In this document: in pieces, positions 51,972-52,992 of the stretch
Numbering within the stretch: the first letter of the stretch is position 1
Layout of the letters: every line of letters begins with the position of its first letter
Origin: Lytechinus pictus
Lineage: Eukaryota
Assembly: GCF_037042905.1 (NCBI RefSeq)
Contig: NC_087249.1
Coordinates: forward strand, 19,096,001-19,160,000
DNA: 64,000 nt
Direction of reading: 5' to 3'
Translations under genes and position numbers: made by a program
The notes under the pieces: generated by a model
The model's database searches: none
Told to the model about the DNA's origin: nothing
Seen by the model: the letters and a program-made list of their open reading frames with translations, nothing else

Positions 51972-52992
51972 AAAATTACAAGCGAATATTTTGGACGTTC
52001 ATCTCCGTTGAAAGCCAAGACTAAAATGAAGGATTTTTCGCGCCTTCGCCTAGGCGCGCGCGCCAAAATATGGGCGCTCCTTGCGCCCAGTATAAATTAT
52101 TGTCATTGTGCGCATAAACAATACCGTCTGGCGCACCATTGTGACGTATCACCTCGTCAACCGCGCCATTCCAAATTACAAACACCTTCATGACCTGGCT
52201 TTGTTCGCCGACCTATAAATCATTTTAAATCGCCGAGTCGTCTTTAAAATACATTATACTCGGCAAACAAAATGACAAAACAAAATAATATGCGATTATG
52301 TCGTGGCTTTATTCAATAGAGATGAACACTTTTCCGAATCTGGTGTCACAATCACATAAGTATAAAACATGGATATGAATACCTCTGATTATAGACTTAC
52401 ATTCATGTATGTCTGGAACCAACCGATAGCCTTTGTTTAGCTCCCCGAAGGGGGGTTAAACCCCCGGCTAGAAGGCCCCCCTCCCAGAAAATTCAACGTT
52501 AAATTTCACGGCTGCTTTCCCACTGGTTCTCTGCTAGCCGGACAGGAATACCAGCACAGCTATTAACTACATGTATGAGCTATCGGCAAATCGGTGGATT
52601 ACAGATGGCATACTTATATCATATAATATACATATATATACCAGCCTTCCCGCATGAGAACTTGGGTGAGGCCAAAATTTCACGAAAAATATAAATGTAT
52701 ACAGAATACCAGCCTCCCCGCCTATGAGATCAGGTGAGGCCTAAACTGAAAGTTCGAGCGTGACACCCTTACATTCAAATTACAATTGCGTTCCTAAAGT
52801 ACTATGTAAAGTTATAAATAAATCCCCTTCGTCTAGGTACCGAATGAGGACCCGATTCAATATGAAATATTAATCAACGTACATGGCATCAAAGTGGAAA
52901 ATCTAATAACTAGAGGCTAAAATATCATTCACTGCTTTACACACCTTGCAAAAGTGACCATTGTGGATTAAAGAACATATTCCATGCCAATA
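51972..52992. repeat. Internal joined repeat (A2 51972-52258 plus B1 52254-52992)
   Basis: Junction AAATACA-TTATA-CTCGGC equals the join of the two outer ends. Confidence 0.95.

What the first reader, a model, noticed from the sequence alone, without database searches (positions are those of the whole stretch)
52240..52275. Same TTATA core at the left end, internal junction and right end
Seen: AAGAAC-TTATA-CTCGGC (50778-50782), ATACA-TTATA-CTCGGC (52254-52258), ATACA-TTATA-ACCGAG (59516-59520). There are no TIRs, and a short inverted pair GCCGAGT / ACTCGGC brackets the internal junction. Known: tyrosine recombinases integrate circles by crossover in a short core shared by donor and target. 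Inference: TTATA is the crossover core, and the inverted 7-mers may be binding arms. An ordinary TSD would not be expected inside the element.
Basis: partly seen in the sequence, partly recalled or inferred. Interest (0 to 1): 0.7.

Follow-up and report, generated by a model that had tools for sequence, protein, structure and literature searches.

The report
Gene-less split-repeat retroelement, TTA junction
The repeated TTATA marks the two ends and the built-in junction of a young, gene-less mobile element of a known kind, the split-repeat retrotransposons that insert with a tyrosine recombinase; across the family only TTA is shared, so this is a clean example and not a new mechanism.

Summary
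TTATA sits at 50778, 52254 and 59516, there are no terminal inverted repeats, and GCCGAGT/ACTCGGC bracket the junction.

The three sites are the left end, internal junction and right end of an 8.74-kb element laid out A(739)-U(450)-B(292)-A-I(6.2 kb)-B. The genome holds 48 such junctions at dispersed loci.

In 24 of 24 copies the ends read flank-TTA-[TACTCGGC...AATACA]-TTA-flank, with no other duplication. The core is therefore TTA. The extra TA at this copy's right end is target sequence, seen in 4 of 24 copies.

Both A copies, and both B copies, of one element always share their variants. This points to regeneration from one template, as with LTRs.

The element has no ORF or protein domain. 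An autonomous family in the same genome (N1) encodes reverse transcriptase/RNase H and a tyrosine recombinase. It has the same layout, the same TTA core and a similar junction hairpin, so it is a candidate helper.

The better inverted partner of the A start is GCCGAccTATAA (52207-52218). One compensatory swap between the two subfamilies supports it.

This is a non-autonomous DIRS-order (Ngaro-like) element, a known kind (TOC1). The scan had already flagged this family on other DNA of this genome.

The parts
50778..50780 (+). Left-end TTA (core copy at the target/element boundary)
   Evidence: 24/24 copies have a variable flank followed by TTA
50778..51516 (+). Repeat A1 (739 bp)
   Evidence: One mismatch in 739 bp against 52254-52992. 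That mismatch, at A position 728, is a family-wide A1/A2 difference.
51517..51966 (+). Spacer U (450 bp), unique within the element
   Evidence: No match elsewhere in the element. Present in all A-U-B units of other copies.
51967..52256 (+). Repeat B1 (about 290 bp), ending in the junction TTA
   Evidence: The terminal 25-mer of B occurs 129 times in the genome; the reversed control occurs 0 times.
52254..52256 (+). Internal junction core TTA.
   Evidence: The junction ATACA-TTA-TACTCGGC is invariant. 48 junctions genome-wide: 23 read TTATA and 25 read TTATT.
52254..52992 (+). Repeat A2
52993..59228 (.). Interior I (6.2 kb). Non-coding; by analogy with N1 its sense strand would be the minus strand.
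   Evidence: Longest stop-to-stop frame is 104 aa. No Pfam hit in 18 frames of this copy and 2 of a divergent one. No Rfam family or tRNA. Conserved end to end in at least 20 copies at 86-98% identity.
59229..59518 (+). Repeat B2, ending in the right-end TTA (59516-59518). 59519-59520 (TA) is flank.
52207..52218 (+). Left arm GCCGAccTATAA of the junction palindrome. It also occurs in B2 at 59469-59480.
   Evidence: ssDNA fold -9.5 kcal/mol, z -3.4. Compensatory T:A to A:T swap between subfamilies, with no mixed form among 48 junctions.
52222..52250 (+). Inner stem ATTTTAAA (52222-52229) / TTTAAAAT (52243-52250).
52254..52264 (+).

Best explanation
Window 50778-59518 is one very young copy of a gene-less family of roughly 50 copies. 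It is a non-autonomous split-direct-repeat retrotransposon of the DIRS order, of the Ngaro-like type.

On the + strand it reads A1-U-B1|A2-I-B2. On the minus strand this is the published A1...B1A2-B2 layout, with a spacer between A2 and B2.

The B1|A2 junction is the built-in copy of the joint formed when the two ends of the replicated element are joined.

**Shown here**
- The layout.
- The TTA signature at both ends and once at the junction.
- The absence of any other target-site duplication.
- Concerted A1/A2 and B1/B2 evolution.
- The lack of coding capacity.
- An autonomous family with reverse transcriptase and tyrosine recombinase (N1) that has the same layout and the same core.

**Inferred**
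- A transcript carrying one copy each of I, A, B and U is reverse-transcribed, and the missing end copies of A and B are regenerated from the internal ones.
- The ends are joined into a circle.
- A tyrosine recombinase supplied in trans, candidate N1, crosses the circle's A-TTA-T junction with a genomic TTA. This leaves TTA on both sides.
- The interrupted palindrome across the junction probably holds the two cDNA ends together, or marks the recombinase site.
For: **Layout**
- Same A-U-B-A-I-B order in 22 of 30 sampled loci.
- 48 internal junctions genome-wide.
- Pairs of B ends spaced about 7.3 kb apart on many chromosomes.

**Ends**
- 24/24 copies read flank-TTA-...-TTA-flank, with no further duplication.
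- A is preferred before the core (13/24) and T after it (14/24). This mimics the element's own A-TTA-T junction.

**Replicative signature**
- Polymorphic sites A139 and A181 always agree between A1 and A2 of a copy.
- Private variants are shared (L009 8/0/0, L028 27/0/0).
- The older subfamily carries the same 89-bp duplication in both A copies.
- The B repeats behave the same way.

**Solo copies**
- Solo A-U-B copies are scattered over the tree (8 changes for 8 solos). They are deletion products, not a separate lineage.

**Autonomous analogue N1** (C4:24883282-24891624)
- Antisense ORFs with RVT_1 (9e-13) plus RT_RNaseH, and Phage_integrase (2e-7).
- Layout [Q u P]x2[Q-ORFs-P]. Other copies carry 0, 1 or 2 units.
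- 8 left ends read xTTAT and 2 right ends read ATTAx, so its core is TTA.

**Junction structure**
- A junction hairpin is predicted in both families (z -3.4 and -2.7).
- One compensatory pair change separates the two subfamilies.

**Literature**
- SDR layout: PMC9210276, PMC13465315.
- 3-bp circular junction and insertion without TSD: PMC3266345, PMC7192593.
- Non-autonomous DIRS element TOC1: PMC9940879.
Against: - No reverse transcriptase, recombinase or other domain lies in the element itself.
- No long nucleotide similarity to N1. The only signal is a weak one: a global alignment of the junction +-60 nt scores z 4.0. The helper link is therefore circumstantial.
- RNA-seq gave no element-specific transcript. 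The interior has depth 0-4. The signal over A-U-B comes mostly from one variant solo copy read through from its flanks.
- No empty site was recovered.
- Gene conversion could mimic part of the concerted evolution.
- Published DIRS trinucleotides are mostly NTT. TTA is not among those listed in PMC3266345.
Confidence: 0.8

Rival explanations
1. TTATA would be a 5-bp crossover core shared by donor and target, with the 7-mers GCCGAGT and ACTCGGC as the recombinase-binding arms.
For: All three TTATA sites and the 7-mer pair exist in this copy. The 7-mer in B is conserved in both subfamilies.
Against: - Only 4 of 24 right ends read TTATA. The fourth and fifth bases vary.
- Half of the family has TTATT at the left end and the junction.
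- The arms are 15 nt and 1 nt from TTA, unlike inverted arms set symmetrically around a short crossover spacer (general knowledge).
- In the predicted fold GCCGAGT lies in a loop.
- The compensatory change involves 52214, not the 7-mer.
Confidence: 0.07
2. This is a DNA-only circle element (Crypton-like, non-autonomous). Circles A-U-B and A-I-B are excised and integrated by a tyrosine recombinase without reverse transcription, and the composite is a co-integrate of the two.
For: Solo A-U-B copies, A-I-B-only copies and a triple form exist. These are what site-specific resolution and co-integration would give. The TTA signature fits equally well.
Against: - Under this model A1 and A2 would evolve as separate lineages, and co-integrates between copies would mix haplotypes. 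Instead 21/21 composites have matching A1/A2 haplotypes and shared private variants, and the same holds for B.
- Solos nest within composite lineages.
- The only coding element found with this layout also encodes a reverse transcriptase.
Confidence: 0.08
3. This is a Helitron or Helentron-type rolling-circle transposon. The tandem head-to-tail units arise from read-through of the termination signal.
For: Head-to-tail units with a precise junction, no TSD, and a subterminal hairpin near one end.
Against: - The ends are TTATAC... and ...ACATTA on one strand and TAATGT... and ...GTATAA on the other, with no 5' TC or 3' CTRR.
- The flanks are not A|T but TTA on both sides.
- There is no Rep/helicase remnant.
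- The two units differ in their middle (U versus I) in every copy. Read-through of one element would not give this.
Confidence: 0.02
4. This is a cut-and-paste DDE transposon with a TTA target-site duplication (PIF/Harbinger-like), or an LTR element inserted by an integrase.
For: TTA on both sides looks like a 3-bp TSD.
Against: - No terminal inverted repeats.
- No TG...CA ends and no 4-6-bp TSD.
- The repeats are split, not terminal LTRs.
- There is an internal junction carrying a single TTA.
Confidence: 0.02

Closest known systems
Ngaro-like retrotransposons (DIRS order), including family N1 of this same genome (C4:24883282-24891624)
   Same: - Split direct repeats: A1 ... B1 A2 ... B2.
- No TSD.
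- The same trinucleotide at both ends and once at the internal junction.
- N1 also has the U-type spacer, a variable number of [A U B] units, the TTA core with A before and T after, and a junction-spanning hairpin.
   Different: - No gag, RT/RNase H or recombinase ORF; the interior is 6.2 kb of non-coding DNA.
- No long nucleotide similarity to N1.
- Published cartoons draw A2 and B2 as adjacent. Here, and in N1, a 450-bp (261-bp in N1) spacer separates them.
TOC1 of Chlamydomonas reinhardtii (non-autonomous DIRS-order element; Day et al. 1988, as cited in PMC9940879)
   Same: A DIRS-order retroelement described as non-autonomous, which must borrow its enzymes (PMC9940879).
   Different: Different kingdom and unrelated sequence. 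I did not read the original TOC1 description, so its detailed repeat geometry was not compared.
DIRS1-like elements (inverted terminal repeats plus internal complementary region), e.g. L067 in this genome
   Same: A 3-bp circular junction that recombines with an identical genomic trinucleotide without TSD (PMC3266345). An internal sequence complementary to the termini is proposed to restore and join the ends (PMC7192593). The junction palindrome here could play the same part.
   Different: DIRS1-like elements have inverted, not direct, terminal repeats, and mostly NTT trinucleotides. They also encode a methyltransferase-like domain.
Crypton DNA transposons
   Same: Tyrosine-recombinase mobility through a circle and a short shared sequence.
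   Different: Cryptons have no long terminal or split repeats and no reverse transcription. The concerted evolution of the repeats here argues for a copying step.

Membership tests
DIRS order, split-direct-repeat type (Ngaro/PAT/VIPER layout) | Split direct repeats: one repeat at the 5' end and again internally; the other internal and again at the 3' end; the internal pair adjacent | tested here: met
   A1=A2 (739 bp, 1 mismatch), B1=B2 (about 290 bp), B1 abuts A2. Same layout in 22/30 sampled loci. A 450-bp spacer lies between the last two repeats, as in N1.
DIRS order, split-direct-repeat type (Ngaro/PAT/VIPER layout) | The same trinucleotide at both ends and at the internal (circular) junction; no target-site duplication | tested here: met
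   TTA in 24/24 copies, with no other duplication. A single TTA at 48 junctions.
DIRS order, split-direct-repeat type (Ngaro/PAT/VIPER layout) | Encodes reverse transcriptase/RNase H and a tyrosine recombinase | tested here: not met
   No frame longer than 104 aa. No Pfam domain. Divergent subfamily copies are also ORF-less. It can therefore be filed only as a non-autonomous derivative.
DIRS order, split-direct-repeat type (Ngaro/PAT/VIPER layout) | Replication through RNA, with the end repeats regenerated from the internal copies | tested here: inconclusive
   Concerted evolution of A1/A2 and B1/B2 fits this. RNA-seq showed no element-length transcript, start or end.
DIRS order, split-direct-repeat type (Ngaro/PAT/VIPER layout) | Circular DNA intermediate integrated by the recombinase | not testable with these tools
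   Needs exonuclease-treated DNA, or reads linking the end of I through B and A into U.
Helitron / Helentron | 5' TC and 3' CTRR ends (or TT target with asymmetric terminal inverted repeats); Rep/helicase in autonomous relatives | tested here: not met
   Ends and flanks. No Rep/helicase remnant.
PIF/Harbinger-type DDE transposons (TTA/TAA duplication) | Terminal inverted repeats | tested here: not met
   No inverted repeat between the termini.
LTR retrotransposons | Two identical terminal LTRs with TG...CA ends, a 4-6-bp TSD, and a tRNA primer-binding site | tested here: not met
   The repeats are split, the ends are TT...TA, and there is no TSD beyond TTA. No tRNA-related hit.

The most novel reading that the evidence does not exclude
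The interrupted palindrome across the junction is a general device of split-repeat recombinase retroelements. It has a left arm inside B that is complementary to the core plus the start of A, and an inner hairpin at the end of B. It would act as an intramolecular splint that lines up the 5' and 3' ends of the linear single-stranded cDNA for joining. That makes it a miniature counterpart of the DIRS-1 internal complementary region. Two unrelated families in this genome have it, and one compensatory change preserves it.
Probability: 0.3. Interest if true: 0.55.

Novelty: new member of a known kind. Interest (0 to 1): 0.35.

Why it matters
The finding gives a well-resolved natural data set for an element class whose integration step is still a model.

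- About 50 near-identical insertions define the core as exactly TTA, with a weak A-TTA-T target preference.
- The terminal repeats are shown to be regenerated at each cycle.
- A gene-less family is paired with a candidate helper that has the same core.
- A junction hairpin is identified that can be tested by mutagenesis.

For annotation, such 8.7-kb ORF-less elements, and their 1.5-kb solo A-U-B remnants, are easily mislabelled as LTRs, tandem duplications or Helitrons.

Tried and rejected
- **Coding capacity.** I scanned 18 stop-free frames of this copy, plus 2 of a divergent copy, against Pfam. Nothing credible came back.
- **Rfam, tRNA and tandem-repeat scans of 50000-60500.** Nothing relevant.
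- **Oversized copy as the autonomous form.** The oversized copy at C5:17331785-17346579 holds a nested 7.5-kb foreign insert, with 7 shared bases at the breakpoints, and is not a coding version.
- **Divergent junction pair.** C15:24484708/24487211 proved to be old fragments.
- **Top recombinase hits of the genome.** These are DIRS1-like elements with inverted repeats and no similarity to this element. L071 has the ORFs but no detectable split repeats.
- **Six further 334-aa recombinase loci.** All belong to N1.
- **Empty site.** The left flank is single-copy. The right-flank repeat begins 123 nt from the insertion. The short repeats around the L014/L034 copy do not cover its insertion point.
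- **RNA-seq.** No start, end or full-length transcript of the family was seen.
- One script call returned nothing.
- **Organism.** I did not verify it. Earlier notes of this scan call it a sea urchin.

Full report
**1. The observation**

AAGAAC-TTATA-CTCGGC is at 50778, ATACA-TTATA-CTCGGC at 52254 and ATACA-TTATA-ACCGAG at 59516. GCCGAGT is at 52232-52238 and ACTCGGC at 52258-52264.

The sites are the edges of two direct repeats.
- A: 50778-51516 equals 52254-52992, with 1 mismatch in 739.
- B: 51967-52258 equals 59229-59520.

On the + strand the element reads A1(739)-U(450)-B1(292)|A2-I(6236)-B2. No inverted repeat of 40 nt or more lies in the region.

**2. It is a family with a fixed layout**

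The window is part of an 812-Mb eukaryotic genome.
- The 1.48-kb A-U-B unit matches 98-100% at 26 other loci and 93% at 7 more.
- In 22 of 30 sampled loci it is followed directly by a second A and the same interior.
- The interior is conserved end to end in at least 20 copies at 86-98% identity.
- The last 25 nt of B occur 129 times, against 0 for the reversed control. Many occur in pairs about 7.3 kb apart.
- The 56-nt junction occurs 48 times.
- Eight of the 30 sampled loci are solo A-U-B. A few copies are A-I-B only, and one locus seems to carry two A-U-B units.
- On a tree of A-U-B the eight solos need eight changes. Each sits beside composite copies. They are therefore deletion products of composites, not a separate lineage.
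- The window copy has a terminal branch of zero length, so it is very young.

**3. The core is TTA**

In 24 of 24 copies with both flanks, the structure is flank-TTA-[TACTCGGC...AAAATACA]-TTA-flank. No further duplication is present.
- The left end always reads TTATA, or TTATT in the older subfamily. This is because TA (or TT) is the start of A.
- At the right end the two bases after TTA vary. TTATA occurs in 4 of 24 copies.
- The element in the window therefore ends at 59518, and 59519-59520 is flank.
- The base before the core is A in 13/24 copies, and the base after it is T in 14/24. This echoes the element's own A-TTA-T junction.

The pattern matches what is described for DIRS-order elements. 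Those carry a 3-bp circular junction that recombines with an identical genomic trinucleotide, without any target-site duplication (PMC3266345, PMC7192593).

**4. The repeats are regenerated together**

Among 21 composite copies the two common polymorphisms of A (positions 139 and 181, T/G) always agree between A1 and A2.
- Private variants are nearly always shared. The counts (shared / A1-only / A2-only) are 8/0/0 for L009, 5/0/2 for L016, 7/0/4 for L020 and 27/0/0 for L028.
- The older subfamily has the same 89-bp internal duplication in both A copies.
- B1 and B2 behave the same way.
- One difference is fixed. A position 728, 12 nt from the inner edge, is G in A1 (19/21) and in all 8 solos, and T in A2 (19/21).

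Thus all but the last 20 nt or so of A is copied from a single template each cycle, as in LTRs. This favours a copying (reverse-transcription) route over pure excision and integration of DNA circles. Gene conversion in master copies cannot be fully excluded.

**5. No genes**

- The longest stop-to-stop frame is 104 aa.
- Twenty frames gave no credible Pfam hit.
- There is no Rfam family and no tRNA.
- A subfamily whose interior has diverged to 70-85% identity is equally ORF-less, while its A and B stay at 94-98%.

The ends are conserved and the interior drifts, which is the mark of a non-autonomous element.

**6. An autonomous analogue in the same genome**

The genome has at least 83 Phage_integrase matches. 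The strongest are DIRS1-like elements with inverted repeats.

A second class, called N1 here (C4:24883282-24891624), has antisense ORFs:
- 482 aa, with no Pfam hit;
- 630 aa, with RVT_1 (9e-13) and RT_RNaseH;
- 334 aa, with Phage_integrase (2e-7);
- 201 aa, with no Pfam hit.

Read on the other strand, N1 is [Q616-u261-P405]x2[Q-ORFs-P]. This is the same [A U B]n[A I B] plan, spacer included. Other N1 copies have 0, 1 or 2 units.

Eight N1 left ends read xTTAT-CTCAACC with x variable. Two right ends read GAGGTATTA-x. The junction is GAGGT-ATTAT-CTCAACC. N1's core is therefore also TTA, with A before and T after.

There is no long nucleotide similarity between the two families. A global alignment of the junction +-60 nt scores z 4.0 against shuffles.

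N1 lacks room for a methyltransferase domain after RNase H, so by the published criteria it is Ngaro-like (PMC4157794, PMC9210276). By analogy, the sense strand of the window element is the minus strand. In the published notation, A1 = 59518-59229, B1 = 52992-52254, A2 = 52256-51967 and B2 = 51516-50778.

**7. The inverted sequences**

Folding the junction as single-stranded DNA gives a longer interrupted palindrome:
- GCCGAccTATAA (52207-52218) pairs with TTATAcTCGGC (52254-52264);
- ATTTTAAA (52222-52229) pairs with TTTAAAAT (52243-52250);
- GCCGAGT lies in the loop.

The fold is -9.5 kcal/mol, z -3.4. N1 has the same geometry with a different sequence (GAGATAACCTCT / AGAGGTatTATCTC, z -2.7).

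Between the two subfamilies the pair 52214:52258 changes from T:A to A:T. The forms are CCTATAA...TTATAC in 23 junctions and CTAATAA...TTATTC in 25, with no mixed form among 48. This is one compensatory event, so it is suggestive rather than proof.

The arm inside B is complementary to the core plus the start of A. It could hold the 5' end of a linear cDNA next to its 3' end, as the internal complementary region is proposed to do in DIRS-1 (PMC7192593). Alternatively it may be part of the recombinase site. This step is inference.

**8. Expression**

Three stranded, rRNA-depleted RNA runs of the same species label were used, with about 6% of each run read.
- Two of them gave depth 4-22 over A-U-B, mostly with the first mate on the minus strand. 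The third gave under 4.
- They gave depth 0-4 over the interior.
- The reads carry the G/G haplotype at A139/A181 and a variant U, and they run into foreign sequence at both element ends.
- Most of the signal therefore comes from one solo copy read through within a host transcript.
- No start, end or full-length RNA of the family was seen. This neither supports nor refutes an RNA intermediate.

**9. Verdict**

It is wrong in two details: the core is TTA, not TTATA, and the 7-mers are not the best-supported arms.

The element is a non-autonomous, Ngaro-like split-direct-repeat retroelement. The kind is known: TOC1 is cited as a non-autonomous DIRS element in PMC9940879. Two earlier follow-ups of this scan reached the same classification for other copies of this family.

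New here:
- the family-wide definition of the core;
- the concerted-evolution evidence;
- the candidate helper N1 with the same core;
- the junction palindrome with its compensatory change.

Noticed in passing
L068+L069 (G000:C5:17338223-17345705): A 7.5-kb insertion is nested in another copy of the family. The two alignment blocks on either side share 7 bases, which may be a 7-bp target duplication. It carries one 1232-aa ORF (L069:104-3799, minus) whose only Pfam hit is a weak coiled-coil match (Rab5-bind, 6e-5). It has no transposase or RT domain and is unclassified.
   Followed up: partly
L067 (G000:C5:10442800-10452799), about 2691-7570: An intact-looking DIRS1-like element with ORFs of 438, 716 and 331 aa. 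It has inverted terminal repeats plus an internal complementary region. Several near-identical copies exist (L056-L061).
   Followed up: partly
window 59643-59900: A small interspersed repeat of about 240-260 bp with at least 40 copies at 74-90% identity. It begins 123 nt right of the element. Another copy of the split-repeat family (C5:23611130) abuts a member of the same small repeat.
   Followed up: partly
window 53744-54546: An internal tandem duplication of about 435 bp inside the non-coding interior (53744-53927 against 54179-54358, 88-90%; 54111-54154 against 54503-54546).
   Followed up: no
G000:C12:3046924-3055951: Three B ends spaced 1582 and 7421 bp apart suggest a copy with two A-U-B units ahead of A-I-B. 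This parallels the 0-2 units seen in N1.
   Followed up: no
window 42001-46000: Strong AT skew (0.20-0.29) and GC skew (0.16-0.17), unlike the rest of the window.
   Followed up: no
RNA reads laid on window 51908-51985: The expressed solo variant replaces 76 bp at the U/B boundary by TAT (17 reads in two runs). It lies inside a transcribed host region, with flanks ...ACAGCTATT and TATTATTATTAGATG....
   Followed up: no
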